From Klebsormidium nitens (taxonomy: Eukaryota; Plantae; Klebsormidiophyceae), in contig DF237049.1 in the NCBI GenBank assembly GCA_000708835.1, positions 62,001 to 126,000 of the forward strand: a stretch of DNA of 64,000 nt. Direction: 5' to 3'. Position 1 is the stretch's first letter, and each line of letters opens with the position of its first letter. A program made the position numbers and the translations under genes. Positions 33,978 to 43,732 of the stretch are shown one piece after another. The notes beneath the pieces were generated by a model that was not told where the DNA came from, did no database searches, and saw nothing but the letters and a program-made list of their open reading frames with translations.

Positions 33978-36900
33978 CTAACAAGCCGTTCCTGTCATTG
34001 TAGAGTGGCGTGCATCGGTCAAAACCTCTTCAACATTCTTGAAACCCGCTTCGCTTAGCATGCGAGCCAGGTTTCGTCCATAAAACTCGTCGCTCCAAGG
34101 CTCAGTAGACTTCATTAACGTGTAAACAGGAGCAGGCAGACTCTGCAGTTCAAAGAAGTTGTGTCATGTTTACAAATCTGCAAAGCAGGGTTAGTTCAAG
34201 AAGGTACAGTAAAACCCGAGACACGGAGTCCAGAAACAGATTCTCGTAATATTTTCAGGCTTCAAGGAACAAGCAAATGCTGATGAAGGGACAAGCTAAC
34301 GGCGTACAGCAGATTAGGTGGTTAAGGAGAACAGCCACAGGATACGGAAGGGCGACAAAAGAGGAGACGAAGCTTCAGAACAGCTTCGAGAAGATGTTTT
34401 ACCTGGATAATCTTCGATCTCGGCTGCACAACGAAAGAACGTCATTAGTGGACACTGACTACAGTCGATTCAATCCATTTCACAAGAGATATTCCAGAGG
34501 GACATCAGTCCTCATACCGTTGCCCCGAACACGACAAACTTGATCAAGCCAAAACTGGCGAATCAAACTTGGACCTTCAAATCGTGAGTTTGACTCTTTT
34601 GAAGCGGGTGGCGATGCAAGGACGGAACGAAGTTGAGAAAGCTCTCACTTACCGAGTTATCGATGATAGCAATCGTCCCCCCAGGCCGCAAAATCCGCTT
34701 CGCCTCCTGGATGAGGTCCCGTGCAGCTGAGTTGGGACACTCGTGCAACTGTAACCAACGACCACGCAAAGATTCTGTCTTAAAATCCTGAAACATTGGA
34801 CGACGGAGAAAGGTGCAATTCTACTATAAGTAGAGCAGCAACAAAACGAAAGCCTGGGCGACTTCTCCATGACCAAGACAACTTGAGTAGCATGTCAACC
34901 TAGAGAAGATATATCTTATAACGGTGCTACACAGCCCCAAGGGGACATGGCTAACAACTAGCCAGTACCTTTCCACCAGGTTTTCATGGGGCCCCCACTG
35001 CTTACCACAAAAGCTAACGAGACGATGTCCACGCTATCGTCGGGCAATCCGGTATTTTCCCCCAGCTTATGCATCCACTGAATCGGCCGCACGGGCTGGC
35101 CAGCTTCCCGAGCTTGCCGGTCGCGAAACTGGGCCACCGACAGGAAGTAGGGGGAGAGGTCCAACCCCTGACGACGAAGAGATAAACAATCAGGAAAATA
35201 CTCTCGACTTGGGTAATCTTGGTGATGACCATAACAAAACCTTGACAGGTTTCTCCTTTCCTCTGTGCTTGTGACAGAAGGAACGCCCTGCCTGCGCGGT
35301 GTCAAAGTGATACAGCTACTACATTTGAATCAAAAACATCTCAGGAAATAGGTCAGTAATCTAGCCAAATATCTGTGTGGTTTGTGGAACAACTTCTTCC
35401 AAAACGTTACTTAGGAATGTGTTTACACCAGGAGTTAGGGCCTACAGTTATCACTTCTCTCTTGACACGATATGCAAAGCTGATGAGTTAAGCTTCGTGA
35501 GCATAGCGCTAGCATCTCAAGGAGGGACTCGACATCCCAACGGTGAATTTAAAGGTTGCTGTCGTGAAAGTACAGATGGAAAACCAACGTTTTAGTAGGG
35601 ATGCTGCCCGTGCAGCCTTGCTCCATGGACGTTCTCAAACTGAAAACGTAATGCATTATTTATGGCACGATTCAACACCCCCTTCTTAAGGGAGCCTCTT
35701 ACCAGCACCTCTTCAGCACTACCAAACTTGTTGGCCAAAAATCTTGTGCTGATCCCTGTGGCACACCCAACGTCCACGATTCTTTTCACTGGCAGACCAC
35801 CTGAGTGCATCTCGTGGTGTTCTCGAATGCGTTCCAGCCAGTTGCCCCGCAAGTATGCATTCGCCTCGTCCACTGAGCTGGCTTGAGGAACGCCACGCAA
35901 CACCATCGAGGCGGAGGCAGAGTCGACTTCAAAAGCAGCCTGCGGCAAGGGGCAATGAAGAACTTGGAGCAAAAGGAGAAGGGCTAGGAGGTAAATGGCT
36001 CAATCAAGGCCCTGGTTTACCAAAGCTGAGGCTGACAACAAACATAGGAAGGCTTTGAGGCAAGACGATTAGAACGTGCAGGCAACGCCACATGATCGCA
36101 CCGTGGAAAGTACACCGTTTTGGGACCATGAATGAAAAAGCAGCTGATGAAGTATCTTGTGGAGAGGAAACTCCTTCAAACAATTGTGTAACTCCTTCAA
36201 ACAATTGTGTAAGTGAGGCCACCCACATCTAAAAGAACAGTATGACTTATACCAATACATGCACATCTCTTAGAGGAACAGAAAACCCTGCTTTAGCCCC
36301 TTCATTTCGCTTTCCGGAAGCATCTTACCTGCCAGCAGAGGTTTCCCCTGTCGTATGCATGAAATGGCTGCAAGTAGTAGTCTGGGTACAGAATGCTCTT
36401 GTCCTCAATCAGCTCCAGTTCTTTGTACACGTCTGACGTCTCAAGCTCCTTGAAATGTCGCCGCCAAGGTACACCATTCTTTTCGGCAGTACTGAATAAG
36501 GAGAGAAGCATATCAGAAGGCGCCCCACCTTTCGAGCACCCAAACTGCTATGGTTTTGACAAACAAGTTCTATAATCTGGCACATGCGATTGCTCACCAC
36601 CTCTTCTTCAAACAAAAAGCGTCAGATAACCAGAAGAGTCAAAATGGTGAAGAGACAACCAGACAGGTAACACAGTCTTGACCACACCCGAACAACACAA
36701 ATGATTTGTTCAATAATAATATACTGACCTGATCATCATTCGTCTCGCCCCTGCCTTCATCAGAGAATACAGCGGTTTGATGCCAATCAGAGTGTTGATG
36801 ACCTTGCTCAAAAGGCTGTCTCCGGACCAGTCAGGCTGCTCCAGGTCTCCCCATTCCCTGTTCTGCTTGACAGTAGTGGTCGCCTCCATAGAGGAGCGTG

Positions 36901-37159
36901 GGGGCTCAAACCTTCTGTGTCTGTTAATTTTATGATGCTTCAGAAACCCTGTTCCAAGACCTTCCCTTCCAGGCAAACCACACCGTTTGCACAGCCGTCG
37001 CCGAAGTAATTGTTTCTTGCTGTTTTGAAGGAGCGCTGTCCTGCCCACCAGCATTTCAGTGCAACCTGGAGAAGCATTCAGTGATAAATTGGGTTTCCTA
37101 CCAGCAGAGAGTTGTGTAGGAATGCAGTTGACAGACCCTGCTGCAACATTGAGAGCCAT
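33978..37159 (-). CDS. Plastid-targeted class I SAM-dependent methyltransferase (Methyltransf_11/UbiE-like family of plants and cyanobacteria)
   Basis: A transit-like N-terminus is followed by PDWSGDSLLSKVINTLIGIKPLYSLMKAGARRMMI|STAEKNGVPW...YPDYYLQPFHAYDRGNLCWQ|AAFEVDSA...RIVDVGCATGIST|GLDLSPYFL...GENTGLPDDSVDIV|HECP...EAKRILRPGG|PRSKIIQ|SLPAPVYTLMKSTEPWSDEFY...TDARH. Confidence 0.9.
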
Positions 37160-37701
37160 GTCTTGTAATAGGTAGAAGTCTGCCGACACCGTCCTGCACC
37201 TCTCCTGCACGAGAGCGCTGGTTCTGCACGCTCTCTCTCCGTCTCTTTCTCTTTCTCCGAGTCTCTCTCTCTCTCTCGGGGTTCTGAAGACTGAGACCAC
37301 CCAAAACCCGTTCAGGTTTGTTTTGTTTGTTCGAAGGAGAATCAGTTCGCTGTCAACTTCCATGTTGGCCAGCCCGGGTCGGACTGCATTTCTCTTTGAA
37401 GGAGCCCGGTTCTGCATCAGATCTCCGTGCCAAACCTTGGAACCCCAAACCTTGACCGCCTGTGGCCCCACCTTTCCCCCACCTCGCTTCTCCCTCCACC
37501 TTGGACTCATGAAGTTGAACTTGAAGTTGAAGGTTTTGGCGCTCCTCCCAGGTGGACCTTGCGCTGCTGAAATTCACTCCTCGTCAATTGGCACTAGTTT
37601 AGGAGAAGCAAAAGTGACGGGGGAGGCGGCTGCTCACACTGGTCGTTGCGGCGGCTTTCTTGCATGGGGCGGAGGTATCTGTAAAGGCGCACCCGGTCAA
37701 C

Positions 37702-40700
37702 ATGTCGTCAAGAAGCTTGCATGTGTCTGCATCGCAGTTGAATCTCGAGAGAGGCTGCATAAAACAAAGCAGGTCGTCTGAAAGGCCACCATTACCAAGT
37801 ACTGGTTGGGCAACCTGCTCAGGATGCAGACAATTCTCTCTTGTAGAGTTAAGCGGGTCCTGTAAATTGCGTCCCCGTAGAAAGTTGAGCGAGTCAGATG
37901 GCGTTGGTTGGAGAGGGGAGGGTGGACAGCTCACTCAAGGCTTGAGCCGGATGAATTGGGCCCTGCAATGTAGAGAATGGAGAGCAGCTCGGAGGTTGCT
38001 GTCTGGGGTGGTGAGAGCAGCGATGGTGCAGCAGACACGGGCAGACAGCGATCACACTAGTCCAGGCGTTGAGTTGGCGTCCTCTCTATTAGATTCGCTC
38101 GCTCCATATGTCAGCATGTAAGTCGGCAAATCGGTTTCAGAAGCTTCGTCTCCACATTCATGTCATGCTGCTGAGTTGTGGTTTCCATAAGAATTTGAGG
38201 GAAGTTGGCACTCTACTTCTCAAAGCTCGTTCCCACAACATACACAACAGAGACAGACAATGTGCTGGGTGCAGTGAGCAGATGCTCTAGCTGCTCTCTG
38301 GCAAGAACGACGCTAGAAGTGGTGGCAGGTCCTCAATGTCCTCACAGTGACACTGCTTGAGTACAAAGTGTGTGACCTGAGTGAGCGGACCCTTTGTTTC
38401 AGGTACGACACCACATTACGAGATGGCGCCCAGATGGTTGGCATTTCACTAACCGTTGGGGACAAGCTCAAGATTGCCCGGCTGCTCACAGAGTTAGGAG
38501 CGGACTATATAGAGGGGGGTTGGCCTGGTTCGAACCCCAAAGATGCAGAGTTTTTCCTCCGATTCCAGGAAGCCATGGCCGGTGCACCTTGCAATGCGAG
38601 GTGAGAAGACAATCAAGCAGGTCCGCATGAGTGGTGTGATCACAAGATCGGGCACTGGATTCCAACGCCCAAAGTGTGATACAAAATGCCCATAGGCCTT
38701 CTGAAACGCCCATATCAAAAGTTGCCATTGGAACTTTTGATGAACCTCGTGTACGTCAGGCCTACTTGAGCACTCTCAGCAATGTTGTCGTGTTCACGCT
38801 GTGGTTATGCACGTTCTGATGAGCTTGGAAAGAAGCCGGCAATTGACAGCAGATCCTGTGCGACAGGTACGGCACTCAGAAAACCAAGTTGGCGGCCTTT
38901 GGGGCGACCCGTAGAAAGTACTCCTCCTGCGAACAGGACGCCAACGTCAAGGCGCTCGTGGACAGCGGTGCTGATGTCATCACTCTAGTAGCCAAAGCGT
39001 GGGACGTGCAAGTGACGAAGGTACTTGAGGCCAGCCTGGAGGAGAATCTGCTTATGATAAGAGAAACAGTGGAGTACTTCAAGGTGAGAAACAGGCTGCA
39101 ACTAAGAAAGTTATGGGTTGAAGAGCCTCCGTTTGGAAGTATTTGCTTTTGCGTCTCGTTGGTGATTGAAGAAACAGCGGTATCTTCTCAGTTGCTCTCG
39201 AGAGACTTCTCCCGATGAGGTGATCTTCTTGGGGTAAAATGGACATATCCTAGTTTCTCAATTCTGTTTGAGCTGTTTGCATGGTTCTCCAACTGTCATG
39301 AAGAGTCAGATGACTGCAATCTCCTCTGGCAATGCGTACTTTTAGCCAGATTCTTACTTTCAAGCCCCTGCCCGCTTGCGAGACGCACCTGTCATAGTCT
39401 TGTAGGCAACCACTGGATTCCCTTTCCCCCCTTATTGTATGTAAAACTTGCACTCCTTATGTTGCAATCGTTGAGTTGCATGGTCTTCGTTTCTGGCCTG
39501 TTGTCTGATTCCTCGCGCGCGTGCGTTGCTGTCAGGCCCTGGGCAAGGAGGTGATGTTGGATGCGGAGCACTTCTTTGACGGCTACAAGGCCAACAGCCA
39601 GTACGCGCTCGCTGCCCTCCGTACTGCTGCGGAGGCGGGCGCCGATGTGGTGGTCCTTTGTGACACAAACGGGGGCAGCATGCCCTGGCAAGTAGAGGTG
39701 AGCGGACATGGGCCGCCCCGGCAGTGCGCCATTTGTTGCTTCTTCTCTCCTCAAGCACCGTGTTGTTGCTTGCTCATCAAGGAACTTGCAACTGCGACCT
39801 TCGTTTGAGAAAAGCTCTACCCTTCACTGCCTGGTTTGTAGATACGGGGGTTTGCGGCTGACGTGGCAGTCTTAGGCATTCTGCTCCCCTGTCTCGAGCT
39901 GCACTTAAACCTCTGTCTCTTTGTTTGTCTCCCGAATGAGGGCTCAAGCACGGTGTTGCAAGAACCTGACAAATCAGCTATCTTCTTTTGGACACAGGAC
40001 TGGACGCGTGCGGCCAAGGAGGTGCTCCAGGACTGGCCTCACGTTCGCATTGGTATCCATACGCATAACGACTGCGACATGGCGGTAGCTAACAGCCTGG
40101 CCGCAGTGAGGGGGGGTGCCACTTTGATACAAGGCTGTATGAACGGATATGGGGAGAGGACAGGGAACGCGAACCTGGTAAGGACGGGCTCGTTTTTGGG
40201 CCTTGTTTGTTGAGTTTACTGAAGTCAATCTGTCTGAAAGGTTTATTGATGGACAGGGTTCCGTCACTCGCTGCTTTTGAAAGGCTGTCGATTCAACCCT
40301 TGCCATGCGTGGGGGTGCCGCCTCGTTTCAGGAAAGCTGTAGTTTGGCCTCAAGTTTTGCGGCTCTGTGATTTTGAACTTGGTGAGACGTGTAGCTTTGA
40401 AGGAAGATCCTGAAAAATGTTCTCAGCAAATGCAGCGAAGCAAACCGCAGAAGCACTTAGAGCTGTTCCCACTTATTGTCGCCTGTACTCGTAGCTCGGC
40501 TTCGCAGAGCCGAGTCCTTGTGGTCCGCAAGCTGAAGCTCTGGCTTCCCGCAGACGCTCCTGTCATAATCAAATTTGCTGTCTGCCTGCAGGTCTCCGTG
40601 ATAGGCGGGCTTCAGGCGAAGATGGGGTACCGCTGCATCCCCATGGAGTCCCTGAGTCGCCTCACAGAGATTGCTTCCGAAGTGGGCGAGATCGCGGGGC

Positions 40701-43045
40701 AGCCCATGAGGCCCAGCCAGCCTTTCGTGGGCTCTAGTGCGTTTGCTCACAAGGGCGGCATTCACGTGGCGGCCGTTCGAAAGGTGGGCGAGGGTGCTCG
40801 AGCTTTCTCTCGAGAAGAGTGTACTTCATGTTGTCGTGTGGCATCGCACAGACGATTGGACAGGATGCTCACGTCAGCCCAGGCCTCCTTTCGTACCCAG
40901 TGCGAGCTCACTCACTTATAGACAGAACCATTTGGACCTGATTGGGGCACGAACGTCCTCCTACGAAGGAGACAAAATCTGAGTTCGATATAAGATTGCG
41001 GAAGCTTCTCAACACCTGTTTTCGGGCTTCAATGCTCTGTTGGCACAGGCAGCCACTCTTCCGCTTTTGCCGCTCGTCTGCATTCAAGTGCTTACCTGTG
41101 CCTCGTTCACGATGCCCTGTCCCGTTGGTGCGCAGATGCCCGAGTCGTACAACCACATGGACCCGCGCAGCGTGGGCAACACGATGCGGTCGGTGGTGAG
41201 CGAGCTGTCGGGGCGCGGCAACATCCTGGACAAGGCCGAGCAGGCGGGCCTCCTGCTCGACAAGGACGTCGCGGGGAGCGTGCTCGCGCGCATCAAGCAG
41301 ATGGAGAACGAGGTGCGGCAGCTTTGGCCTGCTTTTAATTCTCATTACGAGTCAAAGCCGCAGGGACAAGTCTCGAAGGGGTCTTGGTTTTTTGGTAGAG
41401 TGACCGGTCGCTTCCGGAGACGGATGGGCCCAGCTTCGCAGCAGATTGGATGGTTGCGACGTGAACTGCAAAGCAGTCATTGCTGCTGCCCCAGAAGCAT
41501 CAAAGCTGCTCTGCATTGGGAGCTCAAGTCGTAATAGCGCAAGTCGTGGAAGACGTGAAAGTAGAAAGCTGAACACCGAGAGCCTGCAAAGATGCTCGGT
41601 GCTCACGTCGATCTTCCATCCAGACGTCCGCCCCTGCCACGTCACATCCTCCAGGACACGCAGGTCCTTGCCCTGCGCCGCGCCCACCGCCGCGCCCACG
41701 TACTGCCACTGCTTCGTAGAAATGATACATGGCACGGGCCGCTTATAGAGAGATAATGATTGGAAGAGTAAAGCCTTCTCATCCGTTCGAGCGACTGACA
41801 ATGGCAAAGGAAGACTCCTAACGGGTGGAAACCCAGGGACTGACCGAAATTGAGATTTCGTGGTTGCGCTTGTGACATCCACAAGAATCCTCTTGACTGG
41901 CTATGACATCCTTGCACCCTCCTCATAGTGTGGAAATTGACTATAATTTGCAACAGGAGCCGTCTCTGCACAGCCCTCTCAAGGGGAATAGCCTTGTCTG
42001 ACCTTTGGATCCTTGTCAAGTTCGTAGTGACACTTGTTAACGACACGCCCTCCTGGCCGCAGGGGTGCACGTTTGAGAACGCGGGCGCGTCGGTGGACAT
42101 GCTGATCATGCGGCGGGACCGGCACTACCGGCAGCCGTTCCGCGTGCTCGAGTTCTCGGTCATCTCCAGCAACCGGGGCGGCGCGCGCGGCAGCGACTCG
42201 GAGGACGACGAGGTGGGCGAGGCCAGCAGCGGGCACTGCGGGGACTGGCTGGACGCTAACAACAGCCACGTGAACCAGGCCATCGTGAAGCTGCTCGTCG
42301 GGAACAAGGTCAAGGTGCGTGCCGTGATGGCGCCGATGCCTTGCATCGCTGAGTCCACGTTCATAAGTTGTTGCCCTACTTCGCCCGGGACTTGTCAAAA
42401 CGGTGACTGCAGCAGATATGAAAGTTGCGGTGCTTTCTGTGCTTATCACTTCTGCGATCAGCAACTTCGAGTTAAGTTCATTGCGTGTGCTGGCTCAGCT
42501 CAGTTGATTGGTTTGAGGCTCGTCGTTCGCATTCTTGATTGCTTTAAGCAGAAGTGGGTAACCAAACTTCAAGGCCTCGGATCGTTCAGATCTTTTTGTC
42601 GGGAATGCAGGCTTGCCTGGCCGCTTCTCGTGGACGTATGGTTACTTGTGCTCACATTCACCCTTTTGAGCCTTCCGTTTCTCTCCAGTTGAGCGCGGCG
42701 GAGGGCAACGGCCCCGTGGACGCGCTGAACAAGGCCCTGCGCGAGCCGCTCGAGACCGAGTACCCCCAGCTGCGGCAGACCGATTTGGCGGACTACCGCG
42801 TGCGCCTGCTCGAGTCGGACATCTCGGGCCGGTCCGCGTCCGACAGCGCGTCCACCACGCGCGTGACCATCGACTTCGAGGACGAGGACGGCAACAAGTG
42901 GACCACCGTTGGCGCGCACACCAGCATCGTGGAGGCCAGTTTCCGCGCGCTCGTGGACGGGCTCGAGTTCGGCATCATCAATTGCGACGACGTGAGAGCG
43001 CCGGCTGTTTGGAGACTGTCTTTGTGTACCAAGTCGTTTGTTTGA
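37702..43045 (+). CDS. cimA: (R)-citramalate synthase, bacterial CimA type (DRE-TIM family), with N-terminal transit-like extension
   Basis: Spliced motifs: [81 protein letters not shown]...[83 protein letters not shown]...[11 protein letters not shown]. The 3' end is uncertain because a donor at 42992 suggests a short extra exon. Confidence 0.88.
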
Positions 43046-43732
43046 GGGGCAGTCTGAGGTTTTGGGACTTCAGGACGGAGTCTGATCTCAGAGTGCCTCC
43101 TGCCGTCTATAAACGCGAACCGGGACTGCTTCTTAGTGGAGTGTTTTTCTTTCTGTCGGTGCTTTTGGGTTTCTCAGCAAGGATTCGTGGTGCCGAGCTT
43201 CCTTAATAATGCGATTTGACGCTGATCTTTGCACCATAATGGATAAGCGTAGGCCAGTATGTTGCTGACTGCTCATTTCGAAAGTCAGAGTTGGTCTTGG
43301 TTGGCAAAGGTTTGTAGGCGTTTGCGACTTCTTTACTGCTCCATGTTGCTTGACTTGCGGGCGTTCCGGATTTGGGCAATCCGGTTGCATTGCTCGTTGT
43401 CTGCGCTCTGGCAGGCTTGGGGGCTGTGAAGCCTTGAAAGAACGATATATTTGCTAAATGTGAAGCTTACTCAAGCTCCCTGACAAAATCTTCTCTCTCA
43501 AACAGGATGGGTGTGACATCAATTAGCGGAGCTATGGTCAGAAGAAAGGCAAGCGTGTTTGTTCAGCCCTTCTGTAGGACAAAGTACTCAACCTGGAGAG
43601 TTCTTAGACAAACGGCGTTGAAGAGTCGAAGCGACTGGTACCTTAAGCGAATGGTATCCAGATCCTCCAAAGCTGGTGGAGAGTTCCAAGAGAAAGTGAT
43701 ACTCGTACGACACATAGCATGCGAAGTACCTT

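What the first reader, a model, noticed from the sequence alone, without database searches (positions are those of the whole stretch)
37702..43045. Intron-containing, probably plastid-targeted bacterial-type citramalate synthase (CimA): a possible threonine-independent isoleucine route in a green alga
Seen in sequence: the spliced protein has CimA-type signatures ([29 protein letters not shown]) instead of the LeuA/IPMS form (AFAHESGIH). It also has a ~140-aa Ser/Arg-rich N-terminal extension and an acidic insertion ([15 protein letters not shown]) in the regulatory domain. Established: CimA condenses pyruvate and acetyl-CoA to citramalate, giving 2-oxobutanoate for Ile without threonine deaminase in several bacteria and archaea; the apple citramalate synthase evolved separately from IPMS. 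Inference: this is a naturalised bacterial gene that could give the alga a second plastid route to isoleucine.
Basis: partly seen in the sequence, partly recalled or inferred. Interest (0 to 1): 0.75.

Follow-up and report, generated by a model that had tools for sequence, protein, structure and literature searches.

The report
Ancient bacterial-type citramalate synthase gene in Klebsormidium
This alga's intron-split gene belongs to the bacterial citramalate synthase family, which can start isoleucine synthesis from pyruvate; it is an old gene shared with red algae, other green algae, clubmosses and ferns, and public databases already label it so.

Summary
The gene is real. It has ten GT-AG exons on the + strand of a Klebsormidium nitens scaffold. 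The public protein P0171 matches every exon at 100%.

- **Family:** P0171 scores 567.9 bits on NCBIfam TIGR00977 (citramalate synthase; cut-off 450). All LeuA, homocitrate synthase and Leptospira-CimA models stay far below their cut-offs. The metal- and substrate-binding motifs and the C-terminal regulatory domain are intact.
- **Origin:** this is not a transfer private to this alga. Orthologues occur in red algae, the prasinophyte Pyramimonas, other streptophyte algae, Selaginella and ferns. In trees all eukaryotic copies form one clade, sister to Anaerolineae (Chloroflexota). A clade with cyanobacteria is rejected (p-AU 3e-6). No named bryophyte, seed plant or core chlorophyte appeared.
- **Gene ends:** Orthologues carry 62-113-residue, positively charged presequences, so organelle targeting is plausible.
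- **Acidic insert:** it lies in a variable loop shared by all eukaryotic members.

Enzyme activity, location and the "second route to isoleucine" remain inferred. UniRef already names the protein (R)-citramalate synthase.

The parts
37702..38117 (+). In-frame ATGs lie at 37702, 37951 and 38023. The public model P0171 starts at 38023. The true start is unresolved.
38403..38600 (+). Exon 2: start of the catalytic TIM barrel, with YDTTLRDG (substrate-binding Arg, metal-binding Asp) and the [10 protein letters not shown] signature.
   Evidence: (TIGR00977 8.8e-23)
38867..39083 (+). Exon 3: catalytic domain. The acceptor at 38865-66 keeps the phase with exon 2.
   Evidence: (6.3e-18)
39536..39697 (+). 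Exon 4: holds the DAEHFFDG signature. LeuA has a three-residue shorter S-x-E-D-A motif here.
   Evidence: (1.8e-21)
39998..40177 (+). Exon 5: H-x-H-N-D metal ligands and the [12 protein letters not shown] motif.
   Evidence: 3e-18; PF00682 8.2e-18
40592..40783 (+). Exon 6: end of the barrel, with the AFAHKGGIH signature.
   Evidence: (4.6e-18)
41136..41312 (+). Exon 7: post-barrel subdomain (PF22617 HCS_D2).
   Evidence: (1.2e-6)
42063..42314 (+). Exon 8: linker and first part of the regulatory domain. It contains the acidic insert.
   Evidence: no HMM hit on its own
42180..42260 (+). Acidic Ser/Asp/Glu-rich insert. This is the K. nitens version of a variable insertion present in all eukaryotic members and absent from the Anaerolineae sister clade. 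It is predicted disordered.
42689..42991 (+). Exon 9: LeuA_dimer allosteric/regulatory domain (GNGPVDAL motif). It ends at the donor GTGAGA 42992.
   Evidence: 6.8e-23; PF08502 3.3e-16
43506..43526 (+). Exon 10 of the public model (last six residues plus TAG).

Best explanation
This is an intact nuclear gene of Klebsormidium nitens for a TIGR00977-type (Geobacter/Chloroflexi/cyanobacterial-type) citramalate synthase. Shown here: family membership, intact catalytic motifs, a retained C-terminal regulatory domain, and a LeuA-like predicted fold. Also shown: one eukaryotic clade (red algae plus green lineage) whose nearest relatives are Anaerolineae (Chloroflexota) and not cyanobacteria, and N-terminal presequences in the orthologues. 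Inferred mechanism: the enzyme enters an organelle, most likely the plastid. There it condenses pyruvate with acetyl-CoA to (R)-citramalate. The leucine-pathway isomerase and dehydrogenase then convert citramalate to 2-oxobutanoate, giving a threonine-independent entry to isoleucine. The retained regulatory domain would allow feedback control. Inferred history: a non-cyanobacterial bacterial gene was recruited before the red and green lineages split, gained introns and a presequence, was inherited vertically to Klebsormidium, lycophytes and ferns, and appears to have been lost from several other green groups.
For: Every exon with a hit matches TIGR00977 best. The public protein P0171 is 100% identical to the window exon by exon. 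It scores 567.9 bits against a cut-off of 450, and the next family reaches 269 against a cut-off of 517. The R/D, HxH and E motifs are invariant or nearly so in 34 aligned members. Pfam finds HMGL-like, HCS_D2 and LeuA_dimer domains. The AlphaFold model has pLDDT 82.6, and its best PDB matches are HCS, MAM, LeuA and LiCMS structures. In the trees TIGR00977 separates from LeuA/NifV at 100. Eukaryotes are one clade (97*; 98.7/100), sister to Anaerolineae (98*; 97.9/99). A eukaryote-plus-cyanobacteria clade is rejected by the AU test (dlnL 120.7, p 3e-6). All eukaryotes share an insertion at one site. Orthologues are named. Their presequences are 62-113 residues, net positive and Ser/Thr/Ala-rich. 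The citramalate route to isoleucine is documented for Cyanothece (PMC3487460, PMC6349668) and Geobacter (reference 24 of PMC7826400).
Against: No enzyme of the eukaryotic clade has been assayed, and no TIGR00977 member has a solved structure, so pyruvate specificity rests on family membership alone. The K. nitens N-terminus is unresolved: the public model has only a 31-residue, net-negative leader, and the upstream frame looks non-coding. No targeting predictor was available. The root inside TIGR00977 is unstable, because a FastTree run put the outgroup next to the eukaryotes. Only four cyanobacteria were sampled and no glaucophyte. The constrained tree for the AU test came from a fast search. 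The careful mixture-model search did not finish in the time available.
Confidence: 0.75

Rival explanations
1. It is an ordinary 2-isopropylmalate synthase of leucine synthesis, as the NCBI product name says.
For: NCBI and JGI name P0171 and many relatives '2-isopropylmalate synthase'. The fold and domain set are the same as in LeuA.
Against: All LeuA models fall far below their cut-offs (for example TIGR00973 212.5 against 598.7). Identity to E. coli LeuA is 29%. LeuA and NifV sit across a branch with 100% support. The signature motifs differ from LeuA.
Confidence: 0.06
2. The gene came from the cyanobacterial ancestor of the plastid (endosymbiotic gene transfer), and the Chloroflexota affinity is a tree artefact or reflects later transfers among bacteria.
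For: Cyanobacteria have TIGR00977 genes (L038, L051, L058, L076) and use the pathway (PMC3487460). The gene is shared by red and green lineages, as expected for an early plastid-era gene.
Against: Cyanobacteria group with Actinomycetota, away from the eukaryotes, in three analyses. The AU test rejects a eukaryote-plus-cyanobacteria clade. Identity to Anaerolineae is 55-57%, against 42-46% to cyanobacteria.
Confidence: 0.08
3. It is a recent, lineage-specific bacterial transfer into Klebsormidium, or bacterial contamination.
For: Bacterial-type sequence; the closest non-eukaryotic hits are bacterial MAGs.
Against: Nine spliceosomal introns. It is 68-73% identical to orthologues in other streptophytes, against at most 57% to any bacterium. 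Its place in the tree is broadly consistent with streptophyte relationships.
Confidence: 0.01
4. The enzyme makes citramalate or a related 2-alkylmalate for another purpose (organic-acid pool, anaplerosis, chain elongation), or works outside the plastid, and contributes little to isoleucine.
For: Specificity and location are untested. The family's pocket residues cannot be mapped on a solved structure. An earlier scan note says the genome also has a threonine deaminase gene. Cyanobacterial metabolomics papers discuss citramalate in anaplerosis (PMC6349668).
Against: Long conservation across red and green lineages together with a retained allosteric domain fits a feedback-controlled amino-acid enzyme. 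The characterised members of the family serve isoleucine synthesis (literature cited above).
Confidence: 0.1

Closest known systems
NCBIfam TIGR00977 citramalate synthase (cimA of the Geobacter sulfurreducens type; Risso et al. 2008, cited as reference 24 in PMC7826400)
   Same: Full-length match over profile positions 2-519 of 526, at 567.9 bits, above the equivalog cut-off. Same domain order and same signature motifs.
   Different: Nuclear and intron-split. It carries a eukaryote-wide variable insertion in the linker/regulatory region. Orthologues add a 62-113-residue presequence. Which member was assayed is from my own knowledge of the family record; the paper is not held.
Cyanobacterial citramalate pathway (Cyanothece 51142; Wu et al. 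2010 as cited in PMC3487460 and PMC6349668)
   Same: Same predicted reaction and the same pathway logic in an oxygenic phototroph. Cyanobacterial genes belong to the same TIGR00977 clade.
   Different: The algal gene is not the cyanobacterial lineage of the family (42-46% identity; AU test). Cyanothece lacks threonine ammonia-lyase (PMC3487460), whereas K. nitens is reported to have a threonine deaminase gene (earlier scan note, untested).
Leptospira interrogans CimA (PDB 3BLE/3BLF/3BLI; NF042433)
   Same: Same superfamily fold (TM-score 0.88-0.89 normalised to the target) and the same nominal reaction.
   Different: A different lineage of the superfamily: 139.8 bits against a cut-off of 950, and 24% identity.
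Apple citramalate synthase MdCMS (PMC7826400)
   Same: A plant-lineage enzyme proposed to feed isoleucine from pyruvate and acetyl-CoA.
   Different: MdCMS is a recent derivative of plant IPMS, lacks the regulatory region and is not feedback-inhibited (PMC7826400). The Klebsormidium protein is bacterial-type and keeps the regulatory domain. I made no sequence comparison with MdCMS.
Chloroflexi-derived plastid histidinol-phosphate aminotransferase of Plantae (PMC3518814)
   Same: An amino-acid biosynthesis enzyme shared by Archaeplastida lineages whose nearest bacterial relatives are Chloroflexi. This is the same evolutionary pattern.
   Different: A different enzyme and pathway. That survey started from Arabidopsis proteins, and the paper nowhere mentions citramalate.

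Membership tests
TIGR00977 citramalate synthase (equivalog) | Whole-protein score above the curated cut-off (450 bits) | tested here: met
   P0171 scores 567.9 bits over profile positions 2-519 of 526. The exon-wise hits alone sum to about 469 bits.
TIGR00977 citramalate synthase (equivalog) | Groups with bacterial TIGR00977 members and apart from LeuA/NifV in a tree | tested here: met
   The branch to five or three LeuA/NifV outgroups has support 100.
TIGR00977 citramalate synthase (equivalog) | Catalytic motifs of the Claisen-condensing DRE-TIM enzymes: Arg/Asp of DTTLRDG, the HxH metal ligands, the acidic residue of the DAEH motif | tested here: met
   All are present in K. nitens and invariant or at least 90% conserved in 34 sequences.
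TIGR00977 citramalate synthase (equivalog) | C-terminal LeuA_dimer allosteric domain | tested here: met
   PF08502, 59.8 bits on exon 9. The beta-alpha-beta elements are modelled with pLDDT around 90.
TIGR00977 citramalate synthase (equivalog) | Condenses pyruvate with acetyl-CoA to (R)-citramalate | not testable with these tools
   Needs an enzyme assay. No family member has a solved structure for pocket mapping.
2-isopropylmalate synthase LeuA (TIGR00973, NF00208x, TIGR00970) | Score above the curated cut-off | tested here: not met
   Best is NF002085 at 269 against 517; TIGR00973 reaches 212.5 against 598.7.
Homocitrate synthase (TIGR02660 NifV, TIGR02146 LysS) | Score above the curated cut-off | tested here: not met
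   197 against 462.9 and 201.3 against 413.55.
Leptospira-type CimA (NF042433) and archaeal LEU1_arch subfamily (TIGR02090) | Score above the curated cut-off | tested here: not met
   139.8 against 950 and 213.7 against 484.75.
Nuclear-encoded plastid protein | Cleavable N-terminal transit peptide | tested here: inconclusive
   Orthologues carry 62-113-residue, net-positive, Ser/Thr/Ala-rich leaders. In K. nitens the start codon is unresolved and the upstream frame lacks a coding signal. No predictor or localisation data were available.
Apple-type plant citramalate synthase (IPMS-derived) | Derived from plant IPMS and lacking the regulatory region | not tested
By description (PMC7826400) it differs, because this protein keeps the regulatory domain.

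The most novel reading that the evidence does not exclude
The common ancestor of red and green plastid-bearing eukaryotes recruited a Chloroflexota-like, feedback-regulated citramalate synthase. A threonine-independent plastid route to isoleucine has therefore run for over a billion years in red algae, prasinophytes, streptophyte algae, lycophytes and ferns. It was then lost in seed plants (and perhaps bryophytes and core chlorophytes), where apple later re-invented the reaction from IPMS. If so, the statement that the citramalate pathway was known only from microorganisms before apple would need revising.
Probability: 0.45. Interest if true: 0.6.

Novelty: new member of a known kind. Interest (0 to 1): 0.42.

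Why it matters
Textbook plant and algal isoleucine synthesis starts from threonine deaminase. The only plant citramalate synthase described in the papers I could search is the apple enzyme, presented there as the first case outside microorganisms (PMC7826400). A conserved bacterial-type cimA across red algae, green algae, lycophytes and ferns would add an overlooked, probably regulated, entry into branched-chain amino-acid metabolism in these groups. It would also add one more non-cyanobacterial, Chloroflexota-like enzyme to the early plastid metabolic mosaic (compare PMC3518814). For this window alone the result is modest: the gene is correctly typed and already labelled in UniRef. Its public NCBI product name (2-isopropylmalate synthase) and probably its annotated start are what need fixing.

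Tried and rejected
All searches used single exons by reference or the public protein P0171, which matches the exons at 100%.
I therefore could not fetch the genome of the close Klebsormidium relative seen as P0001 (96% identical in exon 9) to test conservation of exon 1.

**Searches that gave nothing useful**
- A metagenome scan with exon 1 returned one locus, L086. It has no cimA and no DNA similarity to the window, so it is a chance hit.
- Exon 8 alone hits no NCBIfam model even at E 10.
- The ESM Atlas look-up with exon 9 only confirmed the LeuA_dimer family.
- No LeuA paralogue lies in the flanks of the 80 bacterial loci. Outgroups came from E. coli and plasmid records instead.
- Flanking ORFs of the window gave no Pfam hit.
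- Risso et al. 2008 is not held.
- Paper searches combining citramalate synthase with Klebsormidium, Selaginella or land-plant gene transfer, and Chloroflexi with Archaeplastida and isopropylmalate synthase, gave nothing.

**Phylogenetic runs that did not finish**
- treekit's AU test on 97 rows did not finish in about 860 s.
- The careful mixture-model search on 47 rows did not finish either.
- I replaced both with IQ-TREE LG+F+G4 with UFBoot plus an AU test.

**Readings considered and rejected**
- IPMS, homocitrate synthase, recent transfer, and contamination; see the rival explanations.
- I did not try to map specificity-pocket residues from Leptospira CimA, because the motifs do not align one-to-one.
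Full report
**What is in the sequence.**
Between 37.7 and 43.5 kb the + strand carries a split gene. Stop-free segments in the three forward frames, tblastn with bacterial homologues and inspection of the junctions give these exons:
- E1: up to 38117
- E2: 38403-38600
- E3: 38867-39083
- E4: 39536-39697
- E5: 39998-40177
- E6: 40592-40783
- E7: 41136-41312
- E8: 42063-42314
- E9: from 42689

All are bounded by GT and AG, and the phases fit. Scanned one by one by reference, E2-E7 and E9 each hit NCBIfam TIGR00977 (citramalate synthase) as their best family, with E from 1e-9 to 7e-23. Together they tile profile positions 4-372 and 428-518. Pfam finds HMGL-like, HCS_D2 and LeuA_dimer domains. E8 has no hit of its own, but it aligns to the missing profile stretch in homologues.

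**Whose gene it is.**
A search of protein representatives with exon 9, followed by a word search with the Spirogloea orthologue, returned P0171. This is the public Klebsormidium nitens protein of 598 residues. NCBI names it 2-isopropylmalate synthase; UniRef names it (R)-citramalate synthase. tblastn of P0171 on the window is 100% identical across exons 1-3, and the lower percentages for later exons come from matches that run on into introns. So the window is K. nitens, which agrees with earlier scan notes on this genome. I used P0171 as the full-length proxy from here on.

- **5' end:** it starts at ATG 38023, which leaves a 31-residue leader.
- **3' end:** it ends with a tenth exon. The donor is GTGAGA at 42992, the acceptor AG is at 43504-05, and exon 10 is 43506-43526 with stop TAG. 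The C-terminal Cys-x-x-x-Gly-Cys motif that results is conserved in Spirogloea, Selaginella and Chlorokybus.

**Family membership.**
P0171 scores 567.9 bits on TIGR00977 against a curated cut-off of 450. No other family passes its cut-off:

| Model | Score (bits) | Cut-off (bits) |
|---|---|---|
| TIGR00977 (citramalate synthase) | 567.9 | 450 |
| NF002085 (best LeuA model) | 269 | 517 |
| TIGR00973 (LeuA) | 212.5 | 598.7 |
| NifV (TIGR02660) | 197 | 462.9 |
| Leptospira CimA (NF042433) | 139.8 | 950 |

Nine orthologues behave the same way. TIGR00977 members have [18 protein letters not shown] and AFAHKGGIH where LeuA has G-F-P, a shorter S-x-E-D-A and AFAH-S/E-SGIHQDG. The Arg/Asp of DTTLRDG, the HxH metal ligands and the conserved Glu are invariant or nearly so in 34 sequences.

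An AlphaFold model built on that alignment has mean pLDDT 82.6, with the barrel above 90. Its best PDB matches are homocitrate synthase, MAM synthase, M. tuberculosis LeuA (full length) and the catalytic domain of Leptospira CimA. No TIGR00977 member has a solved structure, so the substrate pocket cannot be read from sequence.

**Distribution.**
Named orthologues come from these groups:
- **Streptophyte algae:** Spirogloea (three copies), Mesotaenium, Closterium (several copies), Chlorokybus and Mesostigma.
- **Lycophytes and ferns:** Selaginella, Adiantum, Ceratopteris and Pteridium.
- **Chlorophyta:** the prasinophyte Pyramimonas parkeae.
- **Red algae:** Porphyridium, Timspurckia, Rhodosorus, Rhodochaete, Porphyra, Agarophyton, Gracilaria, Gracilariopsis, Galdieria, Cyanidium and Cyanidiococcus.
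- **Unnamed marine sequences:** a large set of 615-735 residues from Tara, MMETSP and metagenomes falls inside the green clade in a FastTree run.

No bryophyte, seed plant or core chlorophyte name appeared above the bacterial hits in three searches. This suggests loss but does not prove it, because only the 8000 candidates sharing most words were scored.

**Origin.**
I ran three analyses.
- **98 rows, LG+C20 PMSF, quick search.** TIGR00977 separates from five LeuA/NifV outgroups at 100. All 37 eukaryotic rows form one clade (97*), made of red algae (98*) and the green lineage (100*). This clade is sister (98*) to a clade of Anaerolineae and lies inside a Chloroflexota-dominated group. The four cyanobacteria (100*) sit elsewhere, with Actinomycetota.
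- **47 rows, LG+F+G4 with SH-aLRT/UFBoot.** Eukaryote monophyly is 98.7/100. Eukaryotes plus Anaerolineae is 97.9/99.
- **AU test.** The best tree that forces eukaryotes and cyanobacteria together is rejected (dlnL 120.7, p-AU 3e-6).

Other evidence agrees. K. nitens is 55-57% identical to the Anaerolineae proteins and 42-46% identical to cyanobacterial ones. All eukaryotic members, red and green, share a variable insertion at one site of the linker/regulatory region, and the Anaerolineae lack it.

It is predicted disordered.

Caveats:
- The root inside the family is not stable.
- Few cyanobacteria and no glaucophytes were sampled.
- The constrained tree came from a fast search.
- The careful mixture-model runs did not finish.

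The pattern has a precedent. Plastid histidinol-phosphate aminotransferase is reported as recruited from Chloroflexi by the Plantae ancestor (PMC3518814).

**Targeting.**
Bacterial proteins begin about four residues before YDTTLRDG. Most eukaryotic orthologues, including transcript-derived ones, carry 62-113 residues there. These leaders are net positive, rich in Ser/Thr/Ala and often begin Met-Ala, which supports import into an organelle.

For K. nitens the start is unresolved.
- The public 31-residue leader is net negative, so it looks truncated.
- The upstream frame is open back to 37618, with ATGs at 37951 and 37702.
- That upstream frame has GC3 of 0.49-0.55 and a negative codon score, like the introns. 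Exons 2-9 have GC3 of 0.57-1.00, rising from 5' to 3'.
- Open frames of 100-260 codons occur in clearly non-coding frames at this locus, so the length of the open frame proves little.

The plastid is the likelier destination by pathway logic, because the leucine-pathway enzymes that would process citramalate are plastid enzymes in plants. This is established knowledge and was not tested here.

**Function.**
By family membership the enzyme should condense pyruvate and acetyl-CoA to (R)-citramalate. Isopropylmalate isomerase and dehydrogenase would then yield 2-oxobutanoate for isoleucine. This route is documented for Cyanothece (PMC3487460, PMC6349668) and for Geobacter (cited in PMC7826400).

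The retained LeuA_dimer domain suggests feedback control. Apple MdCMS, by contrast, lacks that region (PMC7826400). Earlier scan notes report a threonine deaminase gene in this genome (not tested by me). If that is right, this would be a second route and not the only one. Activity, specificity, regulation and flux are all inferred.

**Novelty.**
The identification is already present as an automatic UniRef name. In the searchable library I found no paper on bacterial-type cimA in streptophyte algae, ferns, lycophytes or red algae. The apple paper describes the pathway as previously known only from microorganisms.

I rate it a new member of a known kind. The family call is solid, the evolutionary history is of moderate interest, and the physiology is untested.

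Noticed in passing
window 38403-43042: GC3 of the coding exons climbs steadily along the gene. It runs 0.57 (E2), 0.69, 0.78, 0.70, 0.77, 1.00 (E7), 0.98 and 0.90 (E9), while the introns stay near 51% GC.
   Followed up: no
window 41907-42689, 42670-43203, 36710-37510 (-), 37176-37778: Very long stop-free frames (178-266 codons) occur in introns, in wrong frames over exons and in the upstream spacer, with no Pfam hit where tested. ORF length is a poor guide to coding here.
   Followed up: partly
P0382, P0388, P0395, P0398, P0400, P0404, P0407, P0411, P0418, P0420 (clusters of up to 316 members): An abundant clade of unnamed marine cimA proteins of 615-735 residues (Tara, MMETSP, metagenome contigs up to 2.2 Mb) sits inside the green-lineage clade. 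They are probably picoplanktonic green algae. The species were not identified.
   Followed up: partly
P0183 (Closterium sp. Yama58-4, 1091 aa); P0002/P0168/P0169 (Spirogloea): Closterium has several copies, one of them 1091 residues long (possible fusion or mis-joined model). Spirogloea has three 92-94% identical copies.
   Followed up: no
No named bryophyte, seed-plant, glaucophyte or core chlorophyte orthologue ranked above the bacterial hits, although lycophytes and ferns did. This suggests several independent losses in the green lineage.
   Followed up: partly
L086 (Ga0247809_1000350): The only metagenome hit to the exon-1 peptide (47% over 32 residues) has no cimA and no DNA similarity to the window. 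It is a chance match.
   Followed up: yes
P0001 cluster (P0151-P0153): Exon-9-sized ORFs 96% identical to the window come from JGI, Logan and NCBI contigs. They indicate a closely related Klebsormidium genome in public data, which could settle the 5' end by conservation.
   Followed up: partly
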